NCBI GenBank assembly: GCA_977017575.1
Contig: CDRNVI010000189.1
Span: 1 to 64,000 of the forward strand
Length of the DNA: 64,000 bases
Reading direction: 5' to 3'
Origin: Paramoeba atlantica
Lineage: Eukaryota; Protista; Discosea
A model generated the notes under the pieces. It was not told the DNA's origin. It saw only the letters and a program-made list of their open reading frames with translations, and did no database searches. Both the position numbers and the translations under genes were made by a program. Shown one piece after another: positions 39,001-64,000 of this stretch. The stretch's first letter is position 1. Each line of letters starts with the position of its first letter.

Positions 39001-42000
39001 TTCAAAAAACAAAAAACAAAAAACAAAAAACAAAAAACAAAAAACAAAAAAAACAAAAAAACAAAAAAACAAAAAAACAAAAAAAAAAAACAAAAAAACA
39101 AAAAAACAAAAAAACAAAAAAAAAAAAAAAAAACAAACCACATGACAAAGATGTTCCAAAACAGAAAAACGATGACCCACCAACAACTTCTCCAAAGACA
39201 AATATTGTCGAAAAGAATCATCCCCCTCAAAAGTAATATGAAAATATAAAAGCCCTCTCTCTCTCCCATTCTTTCCTTTCTCTCCCTCTCTCTCTCCCTT
39301 CTCCTTCTCTCCCTTTCCTCCCTTTCCTCCTTTCCCTTCTCTTTTCTGATCTTTTGTTGGAAGAAGAATTTCTGATGATGATCCTTTTGTGAGTAAGAGA
39401 GCTCCTTCATTTTGTTCTATTTTGTAAGATTCAGAAAGAAGGAAAGAGAAGATTTGTTTGAAAATAAGAAAGTTGAAAAATGAAGTTTAAAAGAAAAGAT
39501 CAGAAAGAAGATTTTTAGAAAAGAAAAAAGAGAAAGGAAAAAAACCAGGGCAAATCTCCAATACTTCTCTCTTAATATCACCACTTTCCAACTCCGAAAT
39601 TGGCAAAGAATAAGAAGCAAGATGATAATCTTTCTTCTTTTTCTTATCCACTTCATATAAATTGATTATTACAGTTGATCTTAAATCTGTCACCAAACTA
39701 TTCGAAAGAAATGTTTTAATTTTACTTTTTTTCAGAAATTTTCTTTGTTCTTTTGGTTCTCTTTTCAAGAAGACCTTCATTTAATAAAGATAAAAGAAAG
39801 ACAAACAAGCAAAATTGTTCATTCCACTGAGCAACAGGACCTGGTTTGTTAGTTGTGATGTATTCTTTATCCTCAAAATGGATTGTCGAATAATAAAACA
39901 TTGAGCCTTTTTAATAAAAATAAATAAAAAGAATAAAAATATAAAATTAAATCACAATCATACCAAGATCAGAGCCTCCCAAAAGAGCAACAAACAATCT
40001 CCCCTTACTCTCCATAGCCCACACAACTTGTTCAACCTAAAAAAATAAAACATCAGTAAAAAAAACCCTTCTCTTTAGAAAGAAACCAAACCAAACAAAA
40101 CAAAACAAAACAAAACAAAACAAAACAAAACAAAACAAAACAAAACAAAACAAAACAAAACAACAAGGCAACAAAAATCAAAACAAAAATCAAAACAAAA
40201 CAACCACAAACAACCAAACAAAGAACAAAACCTGCTCTTTTAAAATATTTTTATGTGGTGGTTCACAAATCTCATCTTCAATCCAATCATTAAGAGAATC
40301 ATCAGAATGAGATTCATCATCAAATTCTTCATCCTCATTGTGAATCAAATCTTTGAGTTTTGTCCCAAACTTTCTACTTTTGGTCTGTGAAAAAAATCAG
40401 ATTGTCAGGAAATTGAAAATGTTTTATGGAATGGGCAATTGATAAACTAAATGAAAAAGAGCCTATGACTTTTTTTTGAATAAACAATTAAGAAAAAATT
40501 GAATTATTTCGTAAAAAAAAGAAATCAAACACAAACCCGACTCTTTTTTGCAAGAAAACTGCTCAAAATATTCTGAAACTTCTGAATTAAATAAAAATAA
40601 TCCAACGTTGTTGTTAAATCGTCACTCTCTACCGAATCCAACAAAGCCAATTTATATTTCGCCAAAAAATCGACCAATTCTGTTTTCCATGACGCATCAA
40701 GAAAAGATCTACAGAGAGGAACAAAAGAATAAGTAAACAAAAGATGTGACTTGAGAGAAAAAAGAAAAGAAAAAAAAGGGGGGGAAACCTGGGTCCTTCT
40801 TCTCCACCTTCCCAGACACCTCTTCCTGCTTCAACCAAATCCCTCCCAATGTGGACCACCTAAGTTTGTGATTCCATCAATTTCAAAAAAAAAAGGAGAG
40901 TTGAAGAGAAAAGAAGAGAAAAGAAAAGAAAAGAAAGAGAGAAAAAAAAACTAGATCCAAAAAAAAATAAATAAATAAATAAAAAACCTGTTCACAAAAC
41001 CCATCAAACAACCCAAAACAATCCCTCAAAACCTCATTAACAACTGAATTATTGGCTTCACGAAACTCAGTCTTACAACAAAGCTTCATCAACAATCTGC
41101 CAATCAACTTTAATCCATTTCGACTCCCACTTTCTTCTTCAATTGAATATGTTGCCACCATTGGAATAAAATATCGTAAAAAAATAACAGCACCAACAGC
41201 CCAATGTGACAACGGTGTCCGCTCAACCCTCTCAGCAACTGAATTTTGTCTCACAACTTCAACACATCGATAACAAATGACACAAAGTCCACGTGGCAAA
41301 TTCTCTGCAGCCTCTAATAATTTACTCACAACTCTTTGTAGTGAATTTTTTAGCTGTTTCGTTTTGGGTTCAATCTCATCAATCTCTCGATTTAAAATCA
41401 AGTCACATTTTGATTTTGTCAACTTCAATCCTAACTTCAAAAGCGGTTGTAACAAAGCCATTCCTGGTCCTCGAAATGGCTCCAACAAATGTTTCAACAA
41501 ACACACGCTTGGGCTTGTTTCCCTCATCAACAACGCAACTTTTTTATGTGACTCCAATTCGGAACGAAGCTCAACAAAAAAGAATCCTTCTGGATCACCA
41601 TGAAGATCAAGTAATACGGCCATTAAAAAGGTCAATCGGAGCGGAGACGCTGGAATTCCAATTAAGGTTACCAAGAAGGTCCGGGCCAATAAGTGGCTAT
41701 GTGAACGGAGGATGAGAGAGAGTTGTACAACTTCTAAAACCCAAAACGAATCAGTTTTGTTAAAAAAAAAAAAAAGTTGGAACAACTTTTCTTGCTGTTT
41801 TTTGAAGAGGTTTTTTGGTTTTTTGAAAAAAATCTTTCAAAAAATGGAAGAAAAAAAACCTTGTTTTTGAAGAGTTGAATTCGAAGTTCGTTGGCTTAAC
41901 TTCACTTTTTTAATCCCAGAGGAAGAATTTGACCTTGCCCTGGTCAACAAACCACTACTCAGCGTCTTTGAAGAAGAATACTTTGGCAAAGAAAGCTGTG

Positions 42001-44899
42001 GGCACTCTTTTCGAAAAGAATGTTTTAGATCTGAAATTCTTTCCAACGCCACTTCCATTTCCTCGCTCTTCAAATCATCCAAACCCATGACGTATTTTCT
42101 CATCACATACCCATGAATAAGAAGAATCTTTCCAAAAGAAGTAACAGATTCTCGATCATCTCTCTCAGGAATTTGGCCTTCTGGTTCTTGGTAATGTTTC
42201 CCAAACTCCATAAAACATTCCATTTGAAGCTCCCGATTTTCTTCCTCCAACTCGCATAAACTAACTAAAAATAAATCAAGAAACTGATGACCTTCCGCGA
42301 CACTTTGATTGGCAAACTTCATATTTTCTTCTTCAAAAGTTGTCCCACTTGCTAAAGCTTCGACCATCTTCGCAACAAATTGAAGCAATCTCTTCATCGG
42401 CTGATTTGTTGCCAAATGAAGTTCGTCAGTTGAAGTGAGAGTTGGGCAAAGAAAGTCCAAAAAGAAGAAGCGAATGATTACTTTCTTAGCGAAAGTCTCT
42501 CCAAATTTCTTGGTCATCAAGACAGTCAGACAAGAACAAAAATTAACTAATTGAGGGGGGAGAGTATCCACAGACCCAACAAGCATCTTTAAAAACAACC
42601 GAAAAGCACTCTCAATGCTTTGGCAAGTCGCAATCTGAACGCCCTCTTGCTCTCCAGCATGAATTAAATCTTTAATTTCGTTCAGTTGAGAGACTTGTGC
42701 ATATAAAAACGACCCAACGATTGGTCGGAGATAACGAGTTCCGAAAAAATAGATGAACTTTTTGATGAAGAGAGACCCCGGTGAGTTTGGTAAGAAGAGG
42801 TTATCTTCTGTTTTGCACTCCACTTCATACTCCGATACAGCTTTTTTTTGCAACAAAAAAAGAAGGGGGAAAAAGGGGGGGAAAAGGTGAGAAAAGGTGT
42901 CAAAAAAAAAATTAAAATAATATTTCTAAACCTGTCACCCCAATGCTTGCGAGACCATACATGGAACAAACTCCATAAAAATAAGCAACAGTTTCATTTA
43001 GAGTTGAACCATGATCAATTTCGAAAAATGAGCGCATTGCGACAGGACAAAGTAAGAAGAGATTCAAAGACTTTTCAAGAGAGGAAACAGCAGAAATTTC
43101 CGAATCAATGACCACGGCTGGTGGGAAACCAACCTAAAAAATAACACACATAATTAAAAATAATCAGAAAAAAAAAGTTTTTCCACCCCCAAGAGAGAAA
43201 CTAAAAAAATAAATCCTAAGAAAAAAGAAGAAACCTTATGAGGTTCAGAAATAGACACTCGCTTCTCCTGATGCCAACGAAGAGGAAGCAAATCAGACGG
43301 ATTTGATGAAAAAGATTTGAAATGATCAAGACTTGGGTCACTTAGTGTGGCGATTCGATTAGTATCAGCTCGAACTGTCTCTAATGGACTCATTTTTCTT
43401 CTCAATTTTGGGCCAGTGGAGCTTCGATTTCGTTGGATAATTACATCAGGGTCGGACGAGATTTCAATTGGAGCGCTAAAAAATAAAAGAGAGAGAGATG
43501 AGAAAAAAAAAATAAAAGGAACAAAAAATAAAAACACAAAAAACCACGAATTTTCGATATCAAGTAAACTCTCTCTCAGTTGATCAAGAGTTTCAGTCCC
43601 AAAAATTGCTGCCTTCCCTTCTTTCGCTTTTGCAGTAATTGTGTCCTTCATCAAATCATATTTTTGTGTCAAAATTCGAAGAAAATAACTCACCAACTCC
43701 CTTAAGCGACAAAAATTTTGTGGTCCTCTCTTTCGGTCAAAGACTAGATCTCGATCCATCATCCCGAATTGGATCCGACAAGTTTGTAAAATTTCTGATT
43801 GCTCTGGAGTGAGTTCTTGAGAACCAAAATCTTTGAGAGCAATTTGAAAATATGGCTGGCATTCCAATAAAACATCGTTTGTTTTTTTCATATCCTCACT
43901 TTCAAACCATTCCCCCATGGCTAATCGACGAAGTAAGTAAGCCATGATAGAACTCAAGTATTCAAAGGCAGGAGCAACATCAACAAAAAAGTAGGAAGGT
44001 TTTGCGAGAGCTGGAGCCAAAAAACGGGCAAAGAAACGAGCCAAAAAGACATGAGGAGGGGTTTTAGAGAATTTGTTGGACATTCTTTTCGTCAAAATCG
44101 AAAATATCATTTCTTGTTCAGGAGATATGAGCTGTACTGACCCGGTCAGGAGTTTAATAAAGACGAAAAACAATTCCCCAAGCTTTTTTCGAAATTCTGG
44201 AGATTGTGATTCGAAGGTTCCTGGTCGAACACGCCCAAGATCTTGTTGGAGAAGAGCTTTAAAAACGGTCGATAAAAGTGCAGAATAATAGTTTGCCCCA
44301 GCTCGGAGATTGAAAGAATCAAGAAAATTGGCAACAGCTGAGGAACTGGTGAAAAATTCTTTGTCATCATCCATAATTCGGATCTCGTGATCAATGAGCC
44401 CTGTGAGAGGGGAGGGAATCACAAAAATGAGAGAGAGAGAGAGAGAAAGAAAGAGATATTTGTGAAAATCAAAAAGAGGAAATGTTGATTTTGTTTGTTT
44501 TTTTTTTGAGAAAAAGAAGAAAAAAAAGTGAAGGAAGTGTTACCTAATAAAGCTTCTTGTGTACAATTCATCTTTGCACAAAATTGATAAAAAAGGATTG
44601 GGAGTGTGTCAGGATTGAGATCGGCAGTGTGTGTTAAGAAAGAAGAGAGTGTCAGAGGGGTTGTGACAAAACGGCAGAGAGAACTTTGGAGTTGAATCAC
44701 ACCTTGTGGTGAGATGTTGCTGTTTGTTGTGGAAAATGAGAAGGAATCCTCACTTGTGGAAAAGAGTTCGTCACTTGACTTCTTTTTGGAGAGCTGTGGG
44801 AAGAAAAAAAGAAAAAATTAATGTCAAAAAAAAAAATCAAAAAAAGAGATAAATTTTTACCTCATCTTTATCTTTGTAGTAGATACTATCAAAACTCAT
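36049..44899 (-). CDS. Large protein: 3 degenerate RasGAP-like domains - C2 - canonical RasGAP - DEP - Cys-rich Zn finger - DUF547
   Basis: Exons join in frame from ATG 44899. FLARFFARFLAPAL, FFFLDFLCPTL, VIFLRYFIPMV, LFRGQTL...GFLFLRFLCPALATP; C2 WNEQF...LASYSLPISEL; DEP FAAFDLIDWL...SRVDAVSLG; DUF547 KAAFWLNIYHTLVLH...SLNEIEHAILR...FALNCGSKSCP. Confidence 0.82.
38461..38540. repeat. Intronic (AAAAAT)~13 microsatellite
   Basis: Directly visible. Confidence 0.95.
40095..40162. repeat. Intronic (CAAAA)n microsatellite
   Basis: Directly visible. Confidence 0.9.
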
Positions 44900-48096: not shown

Positions 48097-50076
48097 TCAA
48101 GCAATTGAATAATCTTTCACTTCAAAAAAAAAAAAGGAGAAAGAGAGAAGAAGGGGAAAAAAAGAAAGAGAGGGATGAGAGAAAAAAGGGATGAGAGAAA
48201 AAAGGGATGAGAGAAAAAAGGGATGAAAGAAAAAAGAAAAAAAAAAGAAAAAAAAAGTTCCAAAACCTCCTGCATCTTTAGAAAACAATCGCCCACAAGT
48301 AGGATTCGAAAATGAATGGGAAACAGCGAATTCTAGCAACAATTTCATATAAGGAACTTCTCTTCGAGAATGATCTGGGAGCACACCAACATGAGCAATT
48401 TCCACTTCGCCAGGATTTGAGCGATTTAATTCGATAAAGCCTGCAGGACACCCATTGACATTCAAGACACCGAAAAAGATATTAGGGTCACTTAAAATGG
48501 CTCCAAGTTCGTTATCGAGCATGTTTGAACGTGCGTTCCATCCTTTGACAGCGCCAATTGTATTATATAAATAACGATAGAATGAGATAGTTGGACTGGC
48601 TTGACCAATCGACAATTGAACAGCACCATTGGGGGAGATAGGAATCGAAACGTCATATGGAGCAGAAAAGAGCTCAAAGTTGGTCCCTTCTTCACCATCA
48701 GCCTCTTCACCATCATCACCAAAACCAGCCATACGATCTTCTTGATTATCGGCTTTTCCACGCCATTCTTCCAAGGTTTCTTTCATCTGATTACCAACAT
48801 CAAGCATCTTCTTTTCATCCGCTGTTGATTCCTCTTTTGAAACACACGCTTTAATCCAAGGATGTTCAAGAGCTTGTTTGGCAGTGTATCGCGCATCAGG
48901 GTTGACAACGAGAAGATGATCAATAAAGTCTTTGGCAGAATCAGTAATGTGCTCCCAATAATCTTCTTCATACTCATAAATTCCAGATTGAATCATATCG
49001 AGAAGATCTCGAATATCGGGTGAAGCAAATGGAGGGTACCCACAGAGCAGAATATACGTAATCACTCCAATGGACCATAAATCAGCTTGTTTCCAATAAC
49101 CCATTCCTTGGAGAACTTCTGGTGCGACATAATTTGGAGATCCAACAACTGTTTGAATCAACGTATTTGAACCAACAACTTTTGCCAAACCAAAATCACA
49201 AATTCGAATATCTAAATCGTCGTTCTCTTTGTACAAGAGCAAGTTTTCTGGTTTTAAGTCACGGTGAACGATTTTGCGATCATGAAGATAGTCAATTCCA
49301 GATAAAATTCGTTTAATCAGTTCTGCGGCGTATCGCTCTGAATAAGCCCCCTTGTTCAAAATTCGTTCAAATAGTTCTCCTCCTACTGCGATCTCTGTAA
49401 CAATATAGAGATTATCTTCGTCCTCGTACACTCCTTTCAGTTTGATGATACTTTCGTGATCGATTGTTTTAAGTACTTCTACTTCCGTTTGTAAGCTCTT
49501 TGGTGAGACTTCTTTTCCAACTTGACTCTTGTCGATGACCTTGACCGCAACTACTTCGCTCTTCTCTTTTGCTGTTCCTCGGTAGACCTAGAAATTTTTT
49601 TCGGGAAGAAATTGGGGAAAAAAAAGGAGAAAATTTTAATTAATTGATGAAAAAAAAATTAAATTTTGAGCGAGATTCAAGGAAAAAAAAACAATCCTCT
49701 CTTCAAAATACGACCCAAAAACTCAAGAGAGAAAAAACTCATTGAAAAAACTCAAAAAAACAGAGAGAGCGAAGGGAGGGGAGGGGAAGGATGAGAGGAG
49801 AGAGAGAGAGAGAGAGAATGATGATTCAAAAAAAAATGAAACCTTCGCAAAGGCACCAGTCCCAAGAAGATCAGCTTCAGACCAAGTAAAGTGTTCTTTT
49901 ACGTTTGAAGAACAACCATCAAGAAGCATAACCTTCTTGTCCCCGCCCTTTTGATCCGAGATCAAGTCAATTCTCCTCTTCCTTCTCTGTCCAGAAGACT
50001 TCTTCGTTCCCTTCTCCTTCTTCTCTTTCTTTTCTTTAGTTGTCTTTTTTGTCTTTTTTGTCTTCTTCTCGTCCAT
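48097..50076 (-). CDS. CAMK-family Ser/Thr kinase (CaMK1/MLCK-like) fused to a C-terminal GNAT acetyltransferase-like domain; last exon uncertain
   Basis: LGTGAFAK|VY, VAVKVIDK, HRDLKPENLL, DFG, APE, DLWSIGVI intact; the C-terminus has FYRYLYNTIG...GCPAGFIEL...EIAHVGVLP...LLLEFAV. Confidence 0.88.
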
Positions 50077-51538: not shown

Positions 51539-54500
51539 ATGAAAAATGCATTTGGTGGCCATAAAGATTACATGGAAGAGAAGAAGCGAAAATTAGATCA
51601 ACAATTCCAAAGTCGTTTTTCTGATGACCCTTCTTCTTGTTCGATCCTCTCAGCGAAGGATCTTTCGAAAGAAAGTTCAATTCAGTTTTGATTCTCTCTT
51701 TTTTTTTTTCAATTGGAAAAGATTGGAGAGAGAACCAAAAAAGGAGTTGATCATTTATTTTTGATAATTTTCTTTTTTCTTTCTTTTGAAAGAGATGGAA
51801 TCTTCAGAGGAGTTCATGTTTACATTACTGGGTTTACTGATCCGCCCCTCCCTGAGCTTCAAAGTTTACTTGGTTCTCTTTCCTCTTTTCTTTCTTCTTT
51901 CCTCTTCCTCTTCTGTTCTGTTCTCAGTTTAATCGATGAAATACAGGGAAAAATGGTGGAAAACATGAACAATATTTATCAAAGAGAGTAACACACATTG
52001 TTGCTTCAAATTTGCCTCTAACAAAAGTCAAAGAATGGAAAAAGAAAGGGTTATTTTTTTCTCTTGAAAGGAGCGAGAGAAAGAGAAAAAGAGATGAGAT
52101 AGATGTTGATAATCAATATCAGAATTCGTCAGTTGAAAATTGTTTCTCCTCACTGGTTGGTTCATTCCGTGGAGCAAGGCCGTCTCCTCCCTTGGATTCA
52201 ATATGATTTGTTTAAATCATTACAAGTATTCATTCTCTTTCCTTTCGTTTTTCTGATTCTTATTATTCTTCTGGGGATTCTTTTTTGTTTAATTTTTGTT
52301 TGAACAAAGAGAGGTGGAGAATTCTCAACAGGAGTATCGTCACTTTATCGAGTCGAGGCATCAACCAAATCCTATCTCAAACCATTTAATCCGCAAACTG
52401 ATCTTGATTCTTCATTTATTCGAAAGGAAAGTCAGGAAAGGGGAGAAGAAAGAACAGAAATCAAAGAACGGGAACAAAATCAAGAAAAAGAACGAGAAAA
52501 CAAACCACAGAAGAAAAGAGAGGAACAACAAAATAGATTCGAACAAAAAACAACAGAAAAAAAGAAAGAAACCCAGACGACAATCAAGAAAACTATCAAA
52601 CAAAACCCTCCACAAAAGATGAAACAGATTCCAAACCCAAGTCTTACAGCAGTGGATGATGACTTTATCAAAAATTATTATAACCATTCCCGGTTACATC
52701 ATCTTTCAACTTGGAAACAAAAGTTTAGAGATGAGATGGCGAAGATGGTAGAAGCAGAGACGAGACTTTATTATGATCCAAGTATTGCTTCGACTACATC
52801 AACAACAAACCCTTCAACAACAACATCAACAACATCAACAACATCATCATCAACAACAAAGAAGACTCGACTTATTTGCCATCTCGATTTCGATTGTTTC
52901 TTTGCGTCAGTGGCGATGAGATATCAACCTGCATTATATGGAAGGCCAGTGGCTGTTTGCCATTCTACTTCTCGTTCTTCTACTTCTACTTCTCAGATTG
53001 CTTGTGTTAATTATGTTGGGAGAAAGTTTGGATTGAGGAATGGGATGTTTGTTGCTGAGGTATGGTTCTATTCCATTTTTCGAAGATTTTTGTTTTGTTT
53101 TATTCTTGTTCTTGCTCTAAAAATGAAATGTAAATTAAAATCCCCTCCTCTCTAAACCTTCCTTTTCTATTTTATCTCTTTTTAGGCTTTCAAGAAATGT
53201 CCAGAACTTGAAGTTGTTCCTTATCAGTTTCCGAAATATGAAAAAATTTCAACGATGTTTTATCGATTTTTATTAAAATATTCCAAAAAAATCCAAGTTG
53301 TGAGGTTTTCTATTCTTTTCTTTCAAGCAATGAAGATTAATTTAATTAGTTAGTCAATTAATTTATTTTTTATTAAATGTAGTGTTTTCAATTATATTTT
53401 CTGTTTGAAACTAACCTTTGTTCTCTCCCTCTTTATCAACCAATAGTTGTGATGAAGCCCTGATAGATATCACGGGATGTGAGAATCCAGAGGCGCTTGT
53501 TTTAAAAATAAGAGAAGAAGTGTTTCAAAATTGTGGTTGTAATTTGAGTTGTGGGATTGGAACAAGTATTCTTGTTGCCAGGATGGCTTGTCGGTTTTTC
53601 TTTTCATTCCTTCATCATCTCTCTTTTTCTTCCTTTTTTCTCTCTTTTTTCTCTCTCATCGCGATTCCTCCATTTTGTGTCTTTAGAAAAGCAAAACCAA
53701 ATGGACAAAAATTGGTGTTGCTTGATCAAACAGATGAATTTGTTGCATCAATGCCAATCTCTTCTCTTCCTGGTTAACTTTCAAGAACTTATTTTATGGA
53801 AATTCGATTTTCTGAATAATTAACAAATTTGATTTCAGGTGTTGGGAGAAATATACTCAAAAAAATCGAGAAATTAGTTTCGCCTCAAATCCAGAGTTGT
53901 AAAGATCTTCGAAGTATCCCAAAAAATGTTCTTCAAACTCATTTTGGAAAAAAAGTGGGGGAAGGTTTGTGGGGAATGTGTCGGGGAATCGATGAGAGAG
54001 AGATTGTTACTGGTTCTTTTTCTTTTGAATTCTTTTCTCTTTCTTTTTTCTGATTTTGGGTCTTTTTATTTTTTAAAAACCTTTTTTTTTCAGATTGGTC
54101 TCGAAAATCAATTGGAGCAGAAGTAAATTGGGGGATGAGATTCACTGAACAAAAAGAAGTCACAAACTTTCTCAAGCAACTCGTCACAGAAGTCGTCTCC
54201 AGAATGAGAGAGTCACGTGTTGCTGGTCTTCGAGTGACCATAAAAGTTAAGAAAGCAAAGAGAGAAGGAGATGGGGAGAGAGGAAGGGGAAAAAGGAAAG
54301 AAAAGGAACGTGGAAAGAATTTGGAAGAAGAGGAAGAAGAAGCAGAAGAGGAAAAAGAGGAAGAAGACGAGATCGATGCAGAAGAAAGAGGGGAGAGAAA
54401 AATTATCCAGCCATACAAATATCTAGGACATGGACCGTGTCATAATTACAGCAAATCAATGACACTCCCCCAATTCACAAACACAGAAAAAGTAATCTTT

Positions 54501-55904
54501 TCGACGAGTAATATTTTGTTAACTGAGTTAAAAATCTTGCCTGTGGAGTTGAGAGGGTTGGGAGTTCATATGAGTAATTTAATTACTGTTTCTGAGTTGA
54601 GCGGTTTTTCTGGGGAGGAAGGAGGAAGAGAAGAGGGGAATGAGGAAGAGAGAAGAGGCGGAAAGAGGCATCAGTCGACGATTTTTGAGAAATTACTGGA
54701 GAAACAAAAGGATCGTGAAAAAGAAGAAGAAAAGGAAAGAGAAGAAAGAAGGAAAGGAAAGAGGGAGGTGGGAGATTCTTCAAGTGGGGAGGTGAAACAA
54801 ATGAATATTGATGCTATTGAAGGAGGGGATGGTTCTCGATTCTCCGAAGGTGCTTGTTTTGTTCCTCCTCCGACCTTATCTCAACTTGATCCAACGGTGA
54901 TTGATGTCCTCCCGGAAGATATTCGGAGAGAGATTGATAGAGAATACGGAAGGTCAACAGAGGAGAGAGAAGGCGACAATGAAGATGATCATCTGAGTTC
55001 TCTTGTCCATTTTGTTGATTTGCCTAATTTCTCTCAACTTGATGAAAGTGTTTTGGGGATGCTTCCTTGTGGATTACGGAAAGAAATTGACATCGAATAT
55101 TGGAAAAGAAAGAAGAACAAGAAGAGGGAAAGAGTGATTGAGGGGCAATTGTTCTTAGAAGATCGGAACCCGCCAAAGAAAGCCAGACAACAAACACTTC
55201 GTGAGACTGGATGTCGAGCTTATGCACAAGAAGGGGATGATTTTGTTCTTCCAATTGCACATAAGATCCAAAAAGAATTCGATGTGGAGATGCTGTTGAC
55301 CTTAAGTCCTTCGCTTATCACAGAGACACTTGAGGGAATGGGTTATCAACGCCAGGATATCTCTGATATTTTGAAATTGAAACACAGGCAAGTGGATCAG
55401 ACAGATATTCAACAACCACACACCCCTCTTCAGCGATTTTCCCCGGTTCAACATCGATCACCAGATAGAGCTCAACAACAACAACAACAACCACAACCTC
55501 AACTTCAAAGAAACCAACAACCAATCCCACAATTAATCCAACACCACCAACAAATTACACAACAGCAACATCCCACCCCTTCAAACAGAACAATTATCAA
55601 GCATGCGCCATCATCACTTCTCTTCTTTCACAGTGAACCAATAGATTTCGAATTTCGTGCCACAGTCAAGAAATGGATGGGAAAGACTCTCCATCCCTCT
55701 CCTCTCCAACAAACAATGCTCTCTCTTTTCTTACAACAACTTGTATTTGAGGGAAACTTGGAGGGTTTGCAATTTATGGTTCGGTTTCTCTCTCATTTTG
55801 CAGAGGATAAATTTCCACAATGGAAGAGTACTGTTGCGAAAGTTGTTCAGGATGTACAGGAGGCAGTTGTTTCAGTGTTTGGTGGTTCCCTTTTGGTGAC
55901 TTGA
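51539..55904 (+). CDS. REV1: DNA repair protein REV1 (BRCT, Y-family deoxycytidyl transferase, two UBMs, C-terminal domain)
   Basis: GGHKDYMEEKKRKLDQQF; BRCT GVHVYITG...THIVAS...PHWLVHSV; YYNHSRLHHLSTWK; HLDFDCFFAS; SCDE; UBMs SQLDPTVIDVLPEDIRREI and SQLDESVLGMLPCGLRKEI. Confidence 0.95.
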
Positions 55905-56275
55905 TTTTTCTTTCTCTTTTATCTATTTTGTGAAATATCCCCCAATCGAACCGAAAAAGTTCTTCACATTTTTGAGGACGATTAGGAACTTGAGTTTCTG
56001 AAACTGAAATTTTCTTCAAAAAAAAAAATCCCATTGAAATGGGCTTTTATGAATTGGAGAAAACTCAATAAAATTCTCAACTTCAACACACTGTTTTTGG
56101 TCGAAGCCTTCGAAAAGGGAATGAAACTTATTTGATCTTTTTTACAGTCAAAATAAATGCAAAAAAGCTTTTACTCCCTTTTCTGGCGCTCTTTTTTTGG
56201 AGCCTTCGTTTCGTTTAAAAAAGTTGAAAAAAAGCGTCTGAGTTTAGAGAAAGGAGAGAAGAGAGAGAGAAAGGG

Positions 56276-59200
56276 ATGGAAGAAGAAAAGAGAAAGAAGA
56301 AAGTTGTGATTAAAGGAGAAGAAAAGAAGAAGAAGAGAGTTGTGGTTGGGATTGTTGGAGTGAAAGGGAGTGGGAAAAAGACTCTGTTGTACCAAACTTT
56401 GGCACGTTTTGGAGATCTCAATTCTTTTGGGATTCGTTGTCCATCAAAGTAATTTTATTTTTTTCATTTTTTTTTTCTTTAAAATTCTTTCCTCCTCTTT
56501 CTTCTTTCTTTTTTTTATTCTTATGAAATTTTGATCAACACAATTTTTCTCGATTCAGTGATGATCTCTTTTCAACTCTTTGGACAAACACTCGCAACTT
56601 AATAAGTGGAGCAAGAAAGGCAAGCCACCAAGGAAATGATGATCTTTGGAATACAATTAAAGATGTTGCTGATTTTAAAATTGGTTTTTCTTCAAAGAAT
56701 ATTGATCTTATTGCTCCTCTTTGGGAAAGAGTTATGACAAGTGTATGTATTTTTTCTCTTCTTTCTTCTCTCCCCTCCCTCCTCTCTTTTTCTCTCTTCT
56801 TTTCTCTTTTTCTTTTTTATCCCTCTCTCAAATTTACACACCATCTCTCTTTTCTTTGATTCACACCCCTCATTCTTTTTCCTTTTCTCAAAAAAAAGGG
56901 AGACAAAACAAAAGAAGCCGTTTACAGATCATGTGTCGGATCACAAAGATTGTCTCCATCTTGGGAATCACTTGCCATTGCCATTCCTCGGATTGTTAAA
57001 GAAAAAGAAGCATTTGAAACAAAATTTGAAGAGTTGGTTCAGGCGAAAGTCGATTCTTTGAAGAGGATTCAGGCTGATTTGAGTTTGGAGGGGAGTGATT
57101 TTTCTTTTGTTGTTCCTGATTCTGCTCAGGTTTTTATTTGCTTTCTCATTTTCTTTTCTTTTTTTTTATATCTATTTTGATTAAGTTTATTAATCAATTT
57201 ATTTATTAAAATAAGCAGAATGAGGAACTCGATCTTCGAATTTTCACGGTTCCAATGAGCGATTTTAATGATACGTCATCTCCAAATCAAAATCTTCTCA
57301 AAGGTTTTTTTTTTTTAATAACAAGAAATTATTTGTTTTCCCACCCAAAAACAAAAGAGTAAAATTATTTTACCAAGAAACCCAACACAAGAACAATAAT
57401 TGAAAATCCGAAAAATATCTTTCTGATAAGTCTCTCTCTTTCCCTCTCCCCAAAAAAAAACAACAGAATCATACCAATCTTGGCAGAAAACATCTTCACT
57501 TTCCCAAACCCCAACAATCCTCTTCTTCACAGGATACGATTTATTCAAAAAAAAGATCCAAAATGGAATACAATTAAAAGATTTTTTCACTGATTTTGAA
57601 GGTCCAAAAAATGATCCCCTAGAAGCTCTCCATTTCATAATCCAAAAATTCTCTTCTGCATCTTCTGTTGAATTATTAAAAAATGGACATGTCATTCTGT
57701 GTGTTGGATCAGCTCTTGACCCAACCTCCATCTCCAATTTCCAGCGTGTTTTGATTCCGTTTTGTCAAAGAAAATCGTTTCAAAATCTGCCACATGTTGC
57801 GTTTGATTTGACCCATCCTGAGATGGCTCTCTCTATTACCGATTCAAACCCTCCATCAAATGAAGTCCAACTACTTCAGAATCTCTTCTTTGAATCTTCT
57901 TCGAAAGATATCACCCTTACGGCCATTCCCAATTTCGAAACCGCTCAACTATCATTCAAACACCAGATGAAATGTGCAGATGGAGCTCTAAACTTTTTCT
58001 CAAACCCATTCGTGACGACAAAACGACTCGATTTAAAATATTTAAAACGTGGTTCAATGGACGAAGCTACCTCAGCATGGAAAAAGATCAAACCTGAAAA
58101 TTGTAATGAAGGAACAGTTGGTTTTCGTCACCCAACCATCACAAGTTTCTTTGGCGTCTCTTTAGACCCCCCAGCGTTCGTAATGGAATATATGGAGGGG
58201 GGAGATCTTTCTTCTTATTTGAATGAACCACTTGGTATTCTTGGTGATTTGGTTCGTGTTCTTGAAACGTTGTGGCGTGCGGTCGGTGTTGTCACAATCC
58301 AGCGAGAAGTTGCGGAAAAGACTTTGAAATCTGTCCCACTGGATCTTAATTTGGAGACATTGTGTCATGGTTCATTTCAATTCGAAGCGATTCCAAAGTT
58401 TAAAAAGTGGAGAGAGATGTTGGATGTTTGTCCAAGAGCGGGGAAAAAAGAAAAAGGAGAGGTTGAATTGTTGGAAAATAGTGTCACGCGTGCTTTGAAT
58501 GATTTTTTGAAAGATCCAAATGATAAAAGGAAGAATGAAACTGTGGGGGAGGTTATTAAGGATGTTTCAACTTTGGGAAGGAGACATGGATCTCTTGTTG
58601 GTTTGTTTTTGGATGTGTTTTTTTAATTTTTTTTTTTTGGTGGGTTTTTAGGGTTTTAATTAATTTTCTTGTTTTTTTGGTTTTTCAAAAAGAAAATACT
58701 TTCATTTTTCCAGAAGATTTATTAATCTTAAAATTAAAAACTCACTCATTTTGTGGAATAGGTGATGTGGATTGGAATATTCGATTAAAGATTGCTCTTG
58801 ATGTTATTTCTGGAATTCTCCATCTTCTCTCTCGCTCTCCTTCAGTCCTTATGTCTGATTTGAGTGTATTCTTTTTCTTTCTTTGATTCTTTTTCTTTTT
58901 TTTCTTTTTGAAATTTTAATCATTCTTCATTATTTAGTCTTCAATGATCTTATTGACAAAAGATCCGTTAAAGATCAAGATTGACGATCCTGAGTGGATT
59001 GTCGCGCCACTCGCAAAGGTTTCCTTTCATTTTCACTCTTTTTTTTTTTGGAATGAAAGAAATCTCTTTCTTTTAATACTTTTCGAATCTGATCCAATTT
59101 TTTTCATGATTTAGTTGGTGTATTTGGGACCATACCAAAAACTGATTGAGGTTGGGAAGATGGAAGGTGAAGTGTCTTGGACTGCTCCTGAAGTTCTTCG

Positions 59201-62080
59201 TGGACATTCCCCAACTCTTCGCTCTGGTTTGTTTGGAAAATCTTTGTTAAGTTTTAAAAAATACACAGACTGAAGAGATTTTTTAATTATTTTGGAATTT
59301 GTTTAATTGGTCTTCATATGAATCAGCTCAATTGGTTGATACTCACATCCACTTTCTCTAGTTGTTTACACAGTAGGAATTCTTCTCTGGGAACTCTGGA
59401 CATGTCAGCGCCCATACGACACCTTAATTCGAGAGAGTGGTGTTACAGCTGAGGAAACCCAAAAATTCTTAAAATCATTTGTATTAGAAGGAGGACGACC
59501 GTCCTGGTTTTTTTCCCTTTTTTTTTATTTCCTGTTTCCTCTTTTCCCTTCTCTTCTCTTCCGCTCTCTTCCTTCTCTAACTATTGTTTCTTTTCCAAAA
59601 AGGCCACCAATTAGCACAGATCATGTTCGAACTTGTCCACCAGAATACCGAACACTTGTTGAAGCATGTTGGACAGAAAACTCTGGTCTGAGACCAAGAT
59701 TTAAAGAGTTAATTCATGCTTTGTTACTTGTTTCTTCGAGTTTAGCGCCGAAATTACACTCTGAATTAATTAAACAACCTCACTTTGTTGATTATTGGGT
59801 TGCTGGAGAGGGAAGAGAGCCCAAAAACTCTGGTAAAGAATCGAAGGAATTAGAAGGAGAAAGATTTGTTGTTATTCCTTCCTCAAAGAAAGAGAGTGTG
59901 GCGGAGGAAGGTGACGGTCCTGAGATCAAAGCAGCACAAATTAGGTGGGTTTATTTGATGACAAATTTGGCCAAACAAATCTCTTCTGATGGGGGTCCTC
60001 TTGTGAAAGATTTGGAGTTTTCTCTTTCATATCTGACTTTGGGACAAGCGGTGCTTTTTCGGAAACGAATATCTGCAACTTTTGGAGTTCAAGTTTCGTC
60101 TGATAATATTTTACGGTCTGCAGGAGATGGTTTCACAATTGGAAAGTTTTTGGAAAGATATGTCCTTTCGCTGCGTTCGTTTCGAAGGTGGAGAAAGAAA
60201 TTGAGACAACTTTTTGAAGAGTTGGACAATAGTGAAGAGTTGGTCAAAAATACTGACTTTTTTAATTTGAAATTGGAAGAATTGAATCTTCGGTCGAGTG
60301 AACTAATTGCTCTTCAAAATTTAATTGCGGATCGATTTGCTGTTATGATCCCGTCTGGGAAAATGTTTCAAGTTGTCAAAGAGGGGAGAACACTTGAGGA
60401 TTTTTTGGAACAACATCTTTTGCCACATCGAAACCGTCTCGAGCGTCGCAGCAACGTGGACGACAAGTTCCAAAATCGAGTTTTAAATCTCTTTGCATCT
60501 CTTGAGAATGGCGATCAACTAATCAAAATGACCGATTTTATGGATCTTTCTCTGTCGGAATTAGGGTTATCTTCTTTACAAATGGTTGGTTTACAAGACG
60601 CCATCTCAAAAGAATTTGGAGTTTTTGTACCATCTGGATTATTGTTTGAAGCTGTGGCAACTAATTTATCCATTTTCCAATTCTTTAAAAAATATGTGAT
60701 TGCTTCTTGGAAGAGAGCTGTTGAAACAGAGAATCGTCAAAAGTCGTCACACTCTACTTCACCGAAATCTGGACGTGACGCCGAGGCCAGTCGACTCTCT
60801 CCTCTCAGCGAAGTTGATGCGCTTCAAATCCGAAACCTATTTGGAAAAATCGAAAAATGCAAAGAAATTTCCACCAAAGAAGATTTTTTACAAATCCTTC
60901 TTTTGGACATGAATATGAACTCAACAGATCTGGTTTACCTAAAAAATACAATCTTTTTCGATTTTGGGGTCTATTTACCATCTGAGGTTATATTTCAATC
61001 TATGACCGAATCGATTACAATTGCGGATTTTTTTGTGAGACATGTTTTTGAGAAGTTGCCAAGAGAGAGAGGAGGGGAAGAGACGGGGAGGGCGAGAGGA
61101 GGAGGAGGGGTTGTTGTTACTGAGCAGGATAAGGCTGAGATTTTGAAGACTTTGATGACTTTGGGGTCTTTGAGACCGATTGGGTTTGGTGTTTTTTTTT
61201 ATTATTATTATTTTATTAGTATTATTATTATTTTTTATTTTTTTTTTATTATTTTTTTTTTTCGTTTATTTATTTATTTATTTTATGTTTTTTTCTTCCT
61301 TCTTTTCTTACTGTTGATAATTTTATCATAATAAAAATAATTCTTTTCTCTTAAACAGAGAAAAAGAAGGATATGAAATGTTAAACATGTCGTTGGACTC
61401 ATTTTATATGAACTCACTGGAATTAGTTGGATTTCAAAATGCAATTTCTGTCGCTTTTGGAGTCTTTGTTGCATCTGGCGCAGTATTTGATGGTTTTTTT
61501 CTCTCTCTTCTCTTCTTCTTCTCTCCTCTCTTCCTTTTTTAGAGTATTTTTTTGATTAACTACTTCCTCTCTCTACCTCAATCTCTATCTTTTCTGTATT
61601 TATTGTAGGAGTCGCAAAACAAATGACAGTTATCGAATTTTTTGAAAAATATGTTTTTGAGGCAAGAGTGAAGAAATCAAAAAGAAAGAGAAAAGTACAG
61701 AAGACTCATCTCAAAGAAGAAGAAGAGAGAGTTTCTTATATAAAAAGAAATAAGAGAAGTAGCTCTTCTTCTTCTTCTTCTCTTATTTCTACCTCTGCTT
61801 CTGATCTTGGTCGAAGTGCTCACTCTTTTGCTTCTTTGAGTTCACTTGTACAAAAATCAAAAAAGAAAGAGAAAGACAAAGAGAAAGACAAAGAGAAAGA
61901 CAAAGACAAAGACAAAGACGGAGAGATAAGGTTTCGGGTTGGGAGGAGTGATGGGTTTGCTTTGGAAAAGAAAGAAGAAGAAAGAAAGGAAGGAGAGGTA
62001 AGAGTAAGAAAGGGAAGTAATGCAGCTTTTTGGGTTTTTTTTCTTTTTTCATTTCCTTTCTGTTCTTTACTCCTTTCTCT

Positions 62081-62120
<40 letters not shown>

Positions 62121-64000
62121 CCAAACACTCACAAAACAACAATAATAATAAATAAATAAATAATAGAAAAAACAAAACAAAAGACCACGCGCAAGTCTCG
62201 TTCTCCCAGGTGGCCAAATTCTTGGAGAAGAAGAAGAACTCGAAAATATTGAGATTGAAGCTCTTGAAGATGAGAGAGAGAGAGGAGAGAGAGAGAGAGA
62301 TTTTGTGAAAGAGCATGATCCTGATGTTCATTTGATTGATCCAAAGATTTCTGTGGAGCTTGAAACGTTCTATTTGGAACGATATGGTTTATTTGGATTT
62401 TTTTCTTTTTTCTTTCTTTTTTCTTTCTTGTTTTTTATTATTATTTTTTATTATTATTATTTCCTTTTTATTATTATTTACTTTATTTATTATTATTAAT
62501 GTTTCCTGATCTATTCTTCCATTCCCCCTTCCAAAAAACCCTCTCATCTTCTTCTTCTCCCTCTCCAAAAGGCCTCCTCGGGCTCACCCCAGACGAAATA
62601 ATGCAATCACCCTCCCTAGGCCAAGCACTCCTAACCCGTACATCAAGAAACCCAAACCAAACCATCCTCGTTTGGATTGGTACAAAAGGAAATGAAGAAG
62701 AAAGTATTACAATTGGGGAGTTGGTTCGAAATGCGAAGTTGATTTGGGATGAGATGAAGAAGAAAGGGATCAAGAAGGGGGATCATGTTGCTTTGTGTTT
62801 TGCGCCGTGTTTGTTGTTTGCTCAGGCGTTTTTTGCCTGTGTTTTTGCAGGTTTTTTTATTTTTTGTTACAATCTTTCTTTCTTTTTGTTTTTGAAAATT
62901 AAATTTTTTTTCCCTTTTTTAATCTTATTTTCTAACTTACAAATAAACTAATTTTTTTAAATCTTTAAATTAAAAAAAAATACAAAATAGGAGTTGTATG
63001 TGTCCCAGTATACCCACCAGAACCATCCGCAGCGTTCACAGTCACAAGATTTATAAATATTTGTCGAGATGCCGAGTGTAAATTGATTCTTTCTCACTTT
63101 ATGTGTACTTCTAGAATTGAAAAAGTTGTTGATTTGGGACTTGGGACTACGGGAGGAGAGAAAGGAGAGAAAGGGGAGAAAGAGGAGAAAGGAGAGAAAG
63201 GAGAGAAAGGAGAGAAAGGGGAAGGAGAAGAAAAAGGAGAAAAGAAAAACAAAGGATCAAACGGATTAGATCAATTCCAATGGTTAAATACCGATTTTGT
63301 CAAAGAAAAAAGGGAAGAAAGTTTTGATTTTGATTTTGAAATTGAGTCACAAAATCATGATTCGCTTTGTTTTTTGCAATTTACGAGTGGGTCCACTGGC
63401 TTTCCAAAAGGGGTTATGGTTCGCCATTTGGGGATTTTGTTGGAGTGTGTCTATTTGCCACCAGCTCGTTGTCACGCGCTTTGGCTTCCTCATGTTCATG
63501 ATCTTGGTATGGCTCTAAATTTTTTGTTTATTTTATTTTATTGATTTTTCTTTTCTTTTCTTTTATTTTGTAAAAAAAAGGTGTTTAATTTTTTTTTTTC
63601 ATAAATAGGGTTGCTTTGTTTAATTCAGGGGGTATTAATGAGCCATAGAACATACTTAATGAGTCCTGTGACGTTTGTTCGAGCTCCTCCACTTTGGGTT
63701 TTTTTGTCAAGTGAAATTCGAGCGAATCAAATGATTGGTCCTAATTTTGCATTTGAGTTGTGTGCATTGAAGTTTCCACGTGAGGTTTGTTGTTGGATAT
63801 CAGAATTATTATTTTTCTTTCTTTTCAGTCTAGAACTTTTTTGAAAAATTGTTCTCTTTTTTTTTATTCAATTTAATTCTAAAAATTAAACACTCGTTAC
63901 AACAGGGACTAGACAAAATTGACCTCTCATCAATCCAATACGTCACAAACGGAGGCGAACCAATGAAAAAAACAACAATCGATTTATTCACCAAAACATT
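56276..64000 (+). CDS. Giant multidomain protein, 3'-partial: degenerate G-alpha - TKL/Roco-type pseudokinase - 5 ACP-like repeats - fatty acyl-AMP ligase (FAAL)
   Basis: Manual splicing at GT-AG sites keeps one reading frame from ATG 56276 through ORFs 56950, 57751, 58677, 59721, 61623, 62305, 62499, 63083 and 63611 to the window end. Confidence 0.78.
56330..57780 (+). other. Domain: heterotrimeric G-alpha-like (GTPase motifs degenerate)
   Basis: P-loop GVKGSGKKT; helical domain LWTNTRNLISGA...LWE...PRIV...EELVQAKVDS; PTILFFTGYDLFKKKI...LKDFFTDFEGPKNDPLEALHFIIQKF...SALDPTSI. Confidence 0.75.
58000..59730 (+). other. Domain: TKL/Roco-like kinase fold, probably inactive, with an ~130-aa insert
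   Basis: HPTITSFFGVSLDPPAFVMEYMEGGDL; DWNIRLKIALDVISGILHL; SWTAPEVL; GILLWEL; CPPEYRTLVEACW...RPRFKEL. Confidence 0.85.
59940..61660 (+). other. Domain array: five acyl-carrier-protein (PP-binding)-like repeats
   Basis: ELGLSSLQMVGLQDAISKEFGVFVPSGLLFE and four homologous units match the ACP LGxDSL...FGVxLP pattern. Confidence 0.72.
62570..64000 (+). other. Domain: fatty acyl-AMP ligase (FAAL)-type adenylation domain, continues beyond the window
   Basis: GDHVALCFAP...VPVYPP; FLQFTSGSTGFPKGVMVRH; WLPHVHDLG; MSPVTF...PPLW; GPNFAFELC; DLSS...NGGEP. Confidence 0.88.

What the first reader, a model, noticed from the sequence alone, without database searches (positions are those of the whole stretch)
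59940..61660. Five diverged ACP-like repeats; four keep the phosphopantetheine serine and they lie upstream of the FAAL
Aligned to LG(L)DSLxxVEL: R1 SYLTLGQAV (Ser replaced by Leu, ~60039), R2 LNLRSSELI (Ser ~60294), R3 LGLSSLQMV (~60573), R4 MNMNSTDLV (~60921), R5 FYMNSLELV (~61414). Each is followed by a F(G/A)Vx(V/I/L)xS segment and a hydrophobic F(F/L) helix. Keeping the Ser while the rest diverges suggests selection for holo-ACP function; the preceding Asp is replaced by R/S/N/N. Tandem ACPs are known to raise flux in PUFA synthases and trans-AT PKS, but the usual order is FAAL then ACP, not ACPs then FAAL.
Basis: partly seen in the sequence, partly recalled or inferred. Interest (0 to 1): 0.75.

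Follow-up and report, generated by a model that had tools for sequence, protein, structure and literature searches.

The report
Five carrier-protein domains before a fatty-acid activating enzyme
A spliced gene of an AT-rich protist holds five old, diverged copies of the acyl-carrier-protein domain, four with the cofactor-attachment serine, placed before (not after) a fatty acyl-AMP ligase and behind a G-protein-like/dead-kinase module, a layout I found described nowhere.

Summary
Five about 85-residue repeats lie at 59922-61660 on the + strand, and pairwise scores are 8-24 SD above shuffles. They are real but very diverged acyl carrier protein (ACP) domains.

- **Sequence:** Pfam PP-binding recognises only R3. 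A profile of the subfamily matches canonical ACPs (hhalign probability 96%, E 3e-9), and 33 of 36 PDB hits are carrier proteins.
- **Fold:** An AlphaFold model of R4 (pLDDT 94.5) is a four-helix ACP with the serine at the start of helix II. All 50 best of 48,161 PDB representatives are ACPs or PCPs (Z up to 9).
- **Serine:** R2-R5 keep it; R1 has Leu or a gap there.
the gene is eukaryotic and spliced, and R5 spans three exons. The same exon begins with the end of a kinase-like domain, a G-alpha-like domain lies further upstream, and the protein ends right after the FAAL.
- **Relatives:** among 1.84 billion representatives, the only subfamily relative is a ketosynthase followed by three such repeats, all with the serine.

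Most likely the FAAL in the same protein loads R2-R5 as holo-ACPs (about 0.6, untested). This is a new variant of a known kind. The scan noted the same stretch before in overlapping windows of the same genome.

The parts
56276..59602 (+). Upstream exons of the same predicted gene: G-alpha-like domain and a kinase-like domain that looks degenerate. This is context, not the finding itself.
   Evidence: Pfam G-alpha PF00503 E 1.7e-13 (50.9 bits, cutoff 48.8) and a weak PK_Tyr_Ser-Thr hit on exon piece 57430-58623. Loss of catalytic motifs was read by eye only.
59603..59720 (+). C-terminal end of the kinase-like domain, in the same exon and reading frame as R1-R4.
   Evidence: Pfam PK_Tyr_Ser-Thr profile positions 226-258 of 258, E 0.0037. 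The frame is open from 59340 to 61328. An AG acceptor lies at 59601-59602.
59922..60174 (+). Repeat R1: ACP-like, the most diverged, with Leu (60039-60041) or a gap where the attachment Ser should be.
   Evidence: z 8-10 against R2-R4; alignments A1, A4, A5; no Pfam hit.
60177..60432 (+). Repeat R2: ACP-like, Ser at 60294-60296, preceded by Arg.
   Evidence: z 24 against R3. BLASTP to the canonical tandem-ACP protein P0005 puts R-S on D-S. No Pfam hit on its own.
60450..60708 (+). Repeat R3: ACP domain, Ser at 60573-60575 (motif LGLSSL).
   Evidence: Pfam PP-binding 25.4-30.3 bits against a cutoff of 20.8; BLASTP to P0005.
60795..61056 (+). Repeat R4: ACP-like, Ser at 60921-60923 (motif MNMNST).
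   Evidence: AF2 pLDDT 94.5, pTM 0.85, helices at 6-17, 43-57, 63-71 and 76-85. VIA Z 9.2, rmsd 2.1 A over 76 of 78 residues of PfACP. All top 50 of 48,161 PDB representatives are carrier proteins.
61110..61183 (+). Helix I of repeat R5, at the end of the large exon.
   Evidence: Same frame as R1-R4. GT donor at 61184 with a consistent phase. Similarity to helix I of R2-R4 was judged by eye.
61184..61358 (+). Predicted intron (175 nt, GC 13%).
   Evidence: GT-AG ends, phase consistent. Holds 4 of the 7 indels that separate the two assemblies, and two further differing positions.
61359..61492 (+). Core exon of repeat R5 (loop, helix II, helix III), Ser at 61414-61416 (motif YMNSLELV).
   Evidence: z 8.5-14.5 against R2-R4; alignments A1, A4, A5.
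61493..61608 (+). Predicted intron (116 nt).
   Evidence: GT-AG ends, phase consistent.
61609..61660 (+). Helix IV of repeat R5 (TVIEFFEKYV). The exon runs on to 62016 as a Lys/Glu/Ser-rich linker.
   Evidence: z 6-6.7 against R3 and R4; open frame.
61661..62386 (+). Linker between the array and the FAAL: the rest of the exon to 62016, an intron at 62017-62209, and an exon at 62210-62386.
   Evidence: Phase-consistent GT-AG model with no in-frame stops. There is no RNA evidence.
62572..64000 (+). FAAL domain exons at 62572-62850, 62991-63506, 63609-63784 and 63906-64000. The domain continues beyond the window and ends at L001 15658.
   Evidence: Pfam AMP-binding. FAAL models are the best NCBIfam match for six of the seven exon pieces scanned and are listed for the seventh. 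The best PDB relatives are solved FAALs: 3kxw, 7r7e, FadD23, FadD28, FadD32.

Best explanation
The stretch encodes a tandem array of five ancient, strongly diverged ACP domains inside one large spliced eukaryotic protein. The predicted order is G-alpha-like, kinase-like (probably inactive), ACP x5, a low-complexity linker of about 200 residues, then FAAL, then the end of the protein.

Shown here:
- The repeats are homologous to each other and to PP-binding domains.
- R4 is predicted to adopt the four-helix ACP fold with the conserved Ser at the N-terminus of helix II.
- R2-R5 keep that Ser and R1 does not.
- The downstream domain is a FAAL, and no other carrier domain follows it.

Inferred:
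- R2-R5 are converted to holo-ACPs by a phosphopantetheinyl transferase.
- The C-terminal FAAL adenylates a fatty acid and, reaching back over the flexible linker, loads it as a thioester on these four arms.
- The acyl-ACPs are then used by a partner acting in trans (a ketosynthase, acyltransferase or reductase). The only relative of the subfamily is a ketosynthase carrying three such ACPs.
- R1 is a degenerate, structural or docking copy.
- Because the copies are only 25-33% identical, they may not be equivalent to one another.
For: - **Repeats are real:** z 8-24 against shuffles.
- **PP-binding:** R3 scores above the gathering cutoff.
- **Wide search:** in 1.84 billion representatives the exon finds only four proteins besides itself. 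Three are canonical carrier-domain proteins: P0003 with 5 PP-binding domains, E 3e-6; P0005 with 3, E 2e-4; and P0004, a 5978-residue FAAL-ACP megasynthase. The fourth is P0002, ketosynthase C-terminal half plus three repeats of the same subfamily, E 9e-14.
- **Profile comparison:** subfamily against canonical ACPs gives probability 96%, E 3e-9, Ser on Ser.
- **PDB by sequence:** 33 of 36 profile hits with E<1 are carrier proteins. The best is the ACP of mycosubtilin synthase MycA, 6kfu, E 1.3e-3.
- **Serine column:** 7 of 7 where filled, one of only two fully conserved columns. It is the only nearly invariant column among 19 aligned ACPs.
- **Fold:** AF2 R4 pLDDT 94.5. Foldseek, VIA and the Foldseek-independent VIA-wide search each give only ACPs or PCPs in the top 50.
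- **Sequence around the Ser is seen in other carrier domains:** megasynthase P0004 has LGLNSV and LGLNSL, and the solved holo-ACP AntF has MDSTEL.
- **FAAL identity:**
- **One gene:** seven GT-AG introns of 102-193 nt, all phases consistent, intron GC 13-34% against exon GC 35-46%. Nearly all of the few differences between two assemblies lie in predicted introns, and the one in an exon is a synonymous third-position change.
Against: - No experiment or proteomic data shows the cofactor.
- The Asp before Ser and the Gly of the LGxDS motif are mostly lost, and position +1 is Ser or Thr in R2 and R4. Recognition by a transferase is therefore uncertain.
- Four of the five repeats fail Pfam on their own.
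- A Ser at the start of a helix can be kept for capping alone.
- The AF2 alignment contained canonical ACPs, so the model is not independent of the sequence homology. The single-sequence model of R1-R4 was poor, pLDDT 44.
An ATG at 62499 would allow a separate FAAL gene.
- No ketosynthase, acyltransferase, reductase or phosphopantetheinyl transferase lies within the window or 7.5 kb downstream.
Confidence: 0.6

Rival explanations
1. Pseudo-ACPs. The repeats keep the ACP fold but are no longer phosphopantetheinylated. They would act as a spacer, scaffold or protein-binding module between the signalling-type N-terminus and the FAAL. The FAAL would then use another acceptor, as proposed for DIP2-type FAAL-like domains that have no ACP.
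For: Four of five repeats fall below Pfam PP-binding. The canonical Asp and Gly of the motif are replaced, and R1 has already lost the Ser. Eukaryotic FAAL-like proteins without ACPs exist (DIP2; PMC8460268, PMC9342972). No partner enzymes are encoded nearby.
Against: The Ser is kept in all seven other repeats of the subfamily across two proteins that are only about 25% identical, while its neighbours vary freely. The other subfamily member sits next to a ketosynthase, a context in which carrier function is needed. Every FAAL exon matches bacterial-type, ACP-loading FAALs best.
Confidence: 0.22
Either the array and the FAAL are separate transcripts (the FAAL starting at the ATG at 62499), or the array carries intermediates for an enzyme acting in trans, such as a homologue of the ketosynthase-ACP3 protein.
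For: ORF 61623-62159 would end in a stop if intron 62017-62209 were retained, and an ATG opens ORF 62499-62951. P0002 shows that this ACP subfamily works beside a ketosynthase elsewhere. There is no RNA evidence.
Against: The ATG lies in pyrimidine-rich, low-GC sequence just before a good AG acceptor. Exon 62210-62386 is open, of exon-like GC content, and phase-consistent on both sides. Even as two genes they would be adjacent on the same strand, which still points to a functional pair.
Confidence: 0.12
3. A chance or low-complexity resemblance, or an unrelated helical repeat.
For: Helical domains of about 85 residues are common, and E-values against PDB sequences are modest.
Against: Shuffle z-scores of 8-24; library-wide significant hits to tandem ACP proteins; hhalign probability 96%; only carrier proteins among the top 50 structural matches in an exhaustive search.
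Confidence: 0.02

Closest known systems
FAAL-ACP loading didomains and FAAL/ACP pairs of polyketide and lipopeptide pathways (e.g. HapA, the olefin synthase loading module, MycA, FadD32 with the N-terminal ACP of Pks13)
   Same: A FAAL-type adenylating domain in one polypeptide with PP-binding domains. The best sequence match of the repeat profile in the PDB is the MycA ACP. The N-terminal ACP of Pks13 is among the Foldseek matches. The FAAL exons match solved FAALs best.
   Different: The order is reversed: the ACPs come first and the FAAL is the last domain. There are five carrier domains instead of one. No PKS or NRPS module is present in the protein or nearby. The host is a eukaryote and the gene has introns. 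The protein is fused to G-alpha-like and kinase-like domains.
Tandem ACP arrays of PUFA synthases and trans-AT polyketide synthases
   Same: Several consecutive ACP domains joined by linkers in one protein. Canonical tandem-ACP proteins are the only other significant hits of the exon. A beads-on-a-string arrangement with an additive effect is described in PMC3585217.
   Different: Those arrays usually consist of near-identical copies next to ketosynthase, acyltransferase or dehydratase domains. Here the copies are 25-33% identical, one has lost the Ser, and no such catalytic domain is present. Diverged tandem ACPs with distinct, in-series roles are known in the leinamycin family (PMC7618002), which is the closer analogy.
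DIP2 / CPS1 eukaryotic FAAL-like proteins
   Same: A eukaryotic multidomain protein with a FAAL-type domain outside a PKS or NRPS context. The precomputed annotation gives a weak AMP-dom_DIP2-like hit on the C-terminal subdomain.
   Different: DIP2 has a DMAP1-binding domain plus two FAAL-like domains and no ACP (PMC8460268). Here there is a single FAAL with five ACP domains and a different N-terminal module.
P0002, an uncharacterised ketosynthase + 3 ACP-like protein from a JGI transcript-like contig (L002)
   Same: The only other member of this diverged ACP subfamily. It shares the helix pattern, the L-x-L-x-S motif with a variable residue before the Ser, and the T(I/V)xxFF helix IV. The eight repeats group apart from canonical ACPs in a tree (branch support 94/99).
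   Different: It is linked to a ketosynthase rather than a FAAL. Its three repeats cluster with each other (97/94), so its array expanded separately. Its source organism is unknown.

Membership tests
PP-binding / acyl carrier protein superfamily (Pfam PF00550) | Match to the family profile above the curated cutoff | tested here: met
   R3 scores 25.4 bits alone and 30.3 bits within the exon, against a cutoff of 20.8. R1, R2, R4 and R5 give no Pfam hit on their own. They are tied to R3 by z 8-24, and the subfamily profile matches canonical ACPs at hhalign probability 96%.
PP-binding / acyl carrier protein superfamily (Pfam PF00550) | Four-helix bundle with the attachment Ser at the N-terminus of helix II | tested here: met
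   Tested for R4 only: AF2 pLDDT 94.5, helix II starting at Ser43; Z 9.0-9.2, rmsd 2.1-2.2 A, full-length matches to ACPs. Caveat: the alignment used included canonical ACPs. R1-R3 have only a low-confidence model with the same helix pattern. R5 was not folded.
PP-binding / acyl carrier protein superfamily (Pfam PF00550) | Conserved Ser aligned with the phosphopantetheine attachment site | tested here: met
   R2-R5 have the Ser in the column of the canonical DS motif. This is not met for R1, which has Leu or a gap there.
PP-binding / acyl carrier protein superfamily (Pfam PF00550) | Canonical G-x-(D/H)-S-(L/I) motif around the Ser | tested here: not met
   The residue before the Ser is R, S, N, N. 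The Gly is kept only in R3. Position +1 is S, L, T, L. N-S and S-T contexts do occur in other carrier domains.
PP-binding / acyl carrier protein superfamily (Pfam PF00550) | Covalent 4'-phosphopantetheine on the Ser (holo form) | not testable with these tools
   Needs mass spectrometry or labelling by a phosphopantetheinyl transferase.
FAAL-ACP loading module | Adenylation domain of the FAAL type | tested here: met
   FAAL models are the best NCBIfam match for six of the seven exon pieces scanned and are listed for the seventh. The best PDB relatives are solved FAALs. The segment between the AE(F/A)TL motif and the VDPET motif is about as long as in LpFAAL, which is consistent with the FAAL-specific insertion, but this was not tested structurally.
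FAAL-ACP loading module | Carrier domain directly C-terminal to the FAAL | tested here: not met
   The reading frame stops 89 codons into the last FAAL exon (L001 15658). The next called gene is a deiodinase-like gene on the other strand. All carrier domains are N-terminal.
FAAL-ACP loading module | Association with PKS or NRPS modules | tested here: not met
   None is present in the protein, in the 64-kb window (largest ORFs: kinase, RasGAP, retroelement, REV1), or in 6 kb downstream.
Tandem ACP arrays (PUFA synthase / trans-AT PKS type) | Three or more consecutive ACP domains in one polypeptide | tested here: met
   Five consecutive domains, four of them in one exon.
Tandem ACP arrays (PUFA synthase / trans-AT PKS type) | Near-identical copies that all carry the Ser and sit beside KS/AT/DH domains | tested here: not met
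   Identity is 25-33%. R1 lacks the Ser. No KS, AT or DH domain is present in the gene.

The most novel reading that the evidence does not exclude
The array is not just a loading platform for a pathway. It would be the working part of a signalling enzyme: a G-alpha-like/pseudokinase module controls, or reads out, the acylation state of four pantetheine arms charged by the FAAL in the same protein. That would couple fatty-acid availability to G-protein-type signalling, or to regulated delivery of acyl chains at a membrane. No such wiring of carrier-protein chemistry to a G-alpha or kinase scaffold has been described in what I could search.
Probability: 0.12. Interest if true: 0.85.

Novelty: new variant of a known kind. 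Interest (0 to 1): 0.6.

Why it matters
ACPs and FAALs are well understood as parts of polyketide, lipopeptide and lipid assembly lines. This case would matter in four ways:

- **Range of the ACP family.** It would extend the known sequence range of functional ACPs. The canonical Gly and Asp are gone and most copies are invisible to Pfam, which matters for genome mining in protists.
- **Domain order.** It shows a FAAL acting as the last domain behind its carriers, so domain order need not follow reaction order.
- **Non-equivalent carriers.** It gives a natural array of four diverged carriers plus one dead copy. That is a test bed for the question of whether tandem ACPs are redundant or specialised.
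- **Fusion partners.** It ties carrier-protein chemistry to a G-alpha-like/pseudokinase module in a eukaryote, a fusion I found neither in a search of 1.84 billion proteins nor in the paper library.

If the repeats turn out to be unmodified, the case is still a clear example of ACP domains re-used as a scaffold.

Tried and rejected
- **Word-index protein searches.** The R1-R4 exon and the repeat region of P0002 each returned only themselves.
- **Metagenome contig scan with the exon.** 229 pattern matches, none confirmed by tblastn.
- **Single-sequence AlphaFold of R1-R4.** Too poor to use for fold search, pLDDT 44.
- **ESM Atlas feature search.** Only sub-threshold leads (0.87-0.88): PP-binding clusters and one unrelated family.
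- **Profile without R3 against the PDB.** Only 5 of the 10 weak hits were ACPs, so the direct ACP signal of R1, R2, R4 and R5 alone is marginal. It rests on their strong similarity to R3 and on the larger subfamily profile.
- Two local sandbox scripts did read the whole stretch 56200-64000, including them: a frame listing and a blastn against the already fetched L001.
- **Paper searches.** 'tandem ACP' together with 'FAAL' found nothing, and a search for kinase-FAAL fusions in amoebae found nothing relevant.
- **Search for partner genes in the window.** No PPTase, KS, AT or reductase among the ten largest other ORFs.
- **Rejected reading: the conserved Ser as a target of the adjacent kinase.** By eye the kinase-like domain lacks the catalytic Lys and Asn of the HRD loop and the Asp of DFG.
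- **Organism.** I did not determine its identity. Earlier notes of the scan call it amoeba-like or kinetoplastid-like.
Full report
**What is in the sequence.**
The window is AT-rich (about 35% GC) and shows short open frames separated by T/C-rich stretches, as expected of a eukaryote with short introns. The finding lies in one long exon (59603-61183, + strand) and the two exons after it.

R1 has Leu at 60039. The Ser codons are R2 60294, R3 60573, R4 60921 and R5 61414. Each repeat is about 85 residues. After the Ser it carries the F(G/A)Vx(V/I/L)xS segment and a T(I/L)xxF(F/L)xxxV helix.

The repeats are not chance. Local alignment scores exceed 500 shuffles by 18.6-24 SD among R2, R3 and R4, by 8.5-14.5 SD for the core of R5, and by 8-10 SD for R1.

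**Gene structure.**
Its helix I ends the large exon (61110-61183). Loop, helix II and helix III form a 134-nt exon (61359-61492). Helix IV opens the next exon (61609 onward).

From R1 to the window's end I could place seven GT-AG introns of 102-193 nt. All have consistent phases, no exon has an in-frame stop, and intron GC is 13-34% against 35-46% in exons.

A second public assembly of the same locus (L001, ENA) is 99.82% identical over 7.8 kb. Nearly all of the few differences fall in predicted introns, and the one in an exon is a synonymous third-position change at 63643. This supports the exon model, although homopolymer errors could also concentrate in T-rich introns.

**Are the repeats ACPs?**
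Pfam PP-binding recognises only R3: 25.4 bits alone and 30.3 bits in the exon, against a cutoff of 20.8. The other four get no Pfam hit on their own.

The exhaustive search of 1.84 billion representative proteins with R1-R4 gave just four hits besides the locus itself:
- P0003 has five canonical PP-binding domains, and P0005 has three.
- P0004 is a 5978-residue megasynthase that starts with a FAAL and an ACP.
- P0002 is the C-terminal half of a ketosynthase followed by three repeats of the same diverged kind, with motifs LNLQSS, LSLKSN and LSLSSS.

BLASTP against P0005 places the Ser of R2, R3 and R4 on the Ser of the canonical GLDSL motif.

A profile of the eight subfamily repeats matches a profile of eleven canonical ACPs with hhalign probability 96% and E 3e-9, Ser on Ser. 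Against all PDB sequences, 33 of its 36 hits with E<1 are carrier proteins. The best is the ACP of mycosubtilin synthase MycA, 6kfu, E 1.3e-3. The five in-window repeats alone already gave only carrier proteins (16 of 16). Without R3 the signal is marginal.

In the 19-row alignment the attachment Ser is the only nearly invariant column, and R1 is the sole exception. Within the subfamily it is one of two columns that are fully conserved where filled.

**Fold.**
A single-sequence AlphaFold model of R1-R4 was poor (pLDDT 44), though its helices repeat in the same order four times.

With the 19-row alignment, R4 (Pfam-negative, motif MNMNST) gave pLDDT 94.5 and pTM 0.85. It has helices at 6-17, 43-57, 63-71 and 76-85, so Ser43 is the first residue of helix II, as in ACPs.
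- Foldseek's top 50 PDB matches are all ACPs or PCPs, with probability up to 0.99. They include the N-terminal ACP of Pks13, the domain loaded by the FAAL FadD32 (the link to FadD32 is from my own knowledge).
- VIA-align gives Z 9.2 and rmsd 2.1 A over 76 of 78 residues of Plasmodium ACP.
- The search that does not depend on Foldseek, against 48,161 PDB representatives, again lists only carrier domains in its top 50.

The caveat is that canonical ACPs were in the alignment, so the model is not independent of the sequence homology. R1-R3 and R5 were not modelled with confidence.

**Surroundings.**
The large exon begins with the last conserved block of a protein kinase domain (Pfam profile positions 226-258 of 258), and the frame is open from 59340. 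Further upstream the same predicted gene has weak kinase N-lobe similarity and a G-alpha match above Pfam's cutoff (E 1.7e-13). By eye the kinase lacks several catalytic residues. I did not test this further.

Downstream, after a Lys/Glu/Ser-rich linker, FAAL models are the best NCBIfam match for six of the seven AMP-binding exon pieces and are listed for the seventh. Solved FAALs are the best PDB relatives: LpFAAL 3kxw, olefin-synthase FAAL 7r7e, FadD23, FadD28 and FadD32.

The protein ends 89 codons into the last FAAL exon. The next gene is a deiodinase-like gene on the other strand. The five repeats are therefore the only carrier domains, and they all precede the FAAL. No PKS, NRPS, acyltransferase, reductase or transferase gene was seen among the larger ORFs of the window or in the 6 kb downstream.

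**How it most likely works.**
Shown: ACP homology and predicted fold, the Ser pattern, FAAL identity, and the domain order.

Inferred: a phosphopantetheinyl transferase converts R2-R5 to holo-ACPs. The FAAL forms acyl-AMP and transfers the acyl group to these arms, since FAALs reject CoA and depend on holo-ACP (PMC8460268). The long flexible linker lets the C-terminal FAAL reach back, so order in the chain need not follow order of reaction. The acyl-ACPs are then consumed in trans.

The link of the same ACP subfamily to a ketosynthase in P0002 favours a carrier role. A tree puts the eight subfamily repeats apart from canonical ACPs (94/99) and P0002's three together (97/94). The subfamily is therefore old and the two arrays grew separately.

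The copies share only 25-33% identity, so the 'more copies, more flux' model taken from near-identical PUFA arrays (PMC3585217) fits less well than non-equivalent roles, as shown for diverged tandem ACPs in the leinamycin family (PMC7618002).

I put about 0.6 on loading by the FAAL in the same protein. I put about 0.22 on unmodified pseudo-ACPs, where the Ser might be kept merely as a helix cap.

**Comparison with what is known.**
Reviews describe FAALs as stand-alone, as FAAL-ACP didomains, or at the N-terminus of megasynthases (PMC11837247, PMC8460268). Eukaryotic FAALs are reported as FAAL-PKS or FAAL-NRPS, or as DIP2 proteins without ACPs (PMC12820801, PMC8460268).

I found no paper that holds both 'tandem ACP' and 'FAAL', and none on kinase-FAAL fusions. 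The word-index and metagenome searches found no further relatives.

The parts are known kinds. The arrangement is new as far as I could search: reversed order, five diverged carriers with one dead copy, no assembly-line domain, and fusion to G-alpha-like and kinase-like domains in a eukaryote.

**Verdict.**
This is a new variant of a known kind, with interest 0.6. Overlapping windows of the same genome had already produced the same first-stage note (s1-386511, s1-386229, s1-399671). That is the same DNA, not independent evidence.

Noticed in passing
window 56276-59602: The same predicted gene starts with a P-loop-like GVKGSGKKT and a G-alpha match (PF00503, E 1.7e-13). A kinase-like domain follows whose HRD and DFG motifs look degenerate by eye (MSDLSSSM, YLG), so it may be a pseudo-GTPase/pseudokinase module.
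   Followed up: partly
window 63150-63260: A Gly-Glu-Lys low-complexity insert (GEKGEK...) sits inside the N-terminal FAAL domain, between the first core motifs and the TSGSTG motif. It gave spurious collagen-like hits.
   Followed up: no
L001 14848-14963 and 14985-15100 (beyond the window's end): A 116-nt tandem duplication (87% identity) covers the last ~55 nt of a FAAL exon and the start of its intron. It creates a second copy of the TGDLGFVIGRKIYLSGR coding segment within the intron.
   Followed up: partly
L002 (P0002), residues 1-140: In the ketosynthase half attached to the three related ACP-like repeats, the second catalytic His appears to be replaced (PGNTEICSG where NxGHTEAAAG is usual). 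The contig also has an N gap near 225-235. Both were read by eye only.
   Followed up: no
window 56200-64000 versus L001 6480-14283: Two public assemblies of this locus differ at only a few positions (99.82% identity). Nearly all differences lie in predicted introns, mostly as length changes in T runs, and one is a synonymous change at 63643.
   Followed up: yes
window 54135-55904: The neighbouring upstream gene encodes the C-terminal part of a REV1-like translesion polymerase (IMS_C and REV1_C). An IMS domain ORF lies further upstream in L001.
   Followed up: no
   Followed up: no
window 40883-42856 and 48097-49431 (- strand): Other large ORFs in the window are signalling genes (two RasGAP-like pieces and a canonical protein kinase). 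A retroelement fragment lies at 12856-14013. There are no lipid or polyketide genes.
   Followed up: partly
Nothing was laid, and the stretch was kept out of all later database searches.
   Followed up: no
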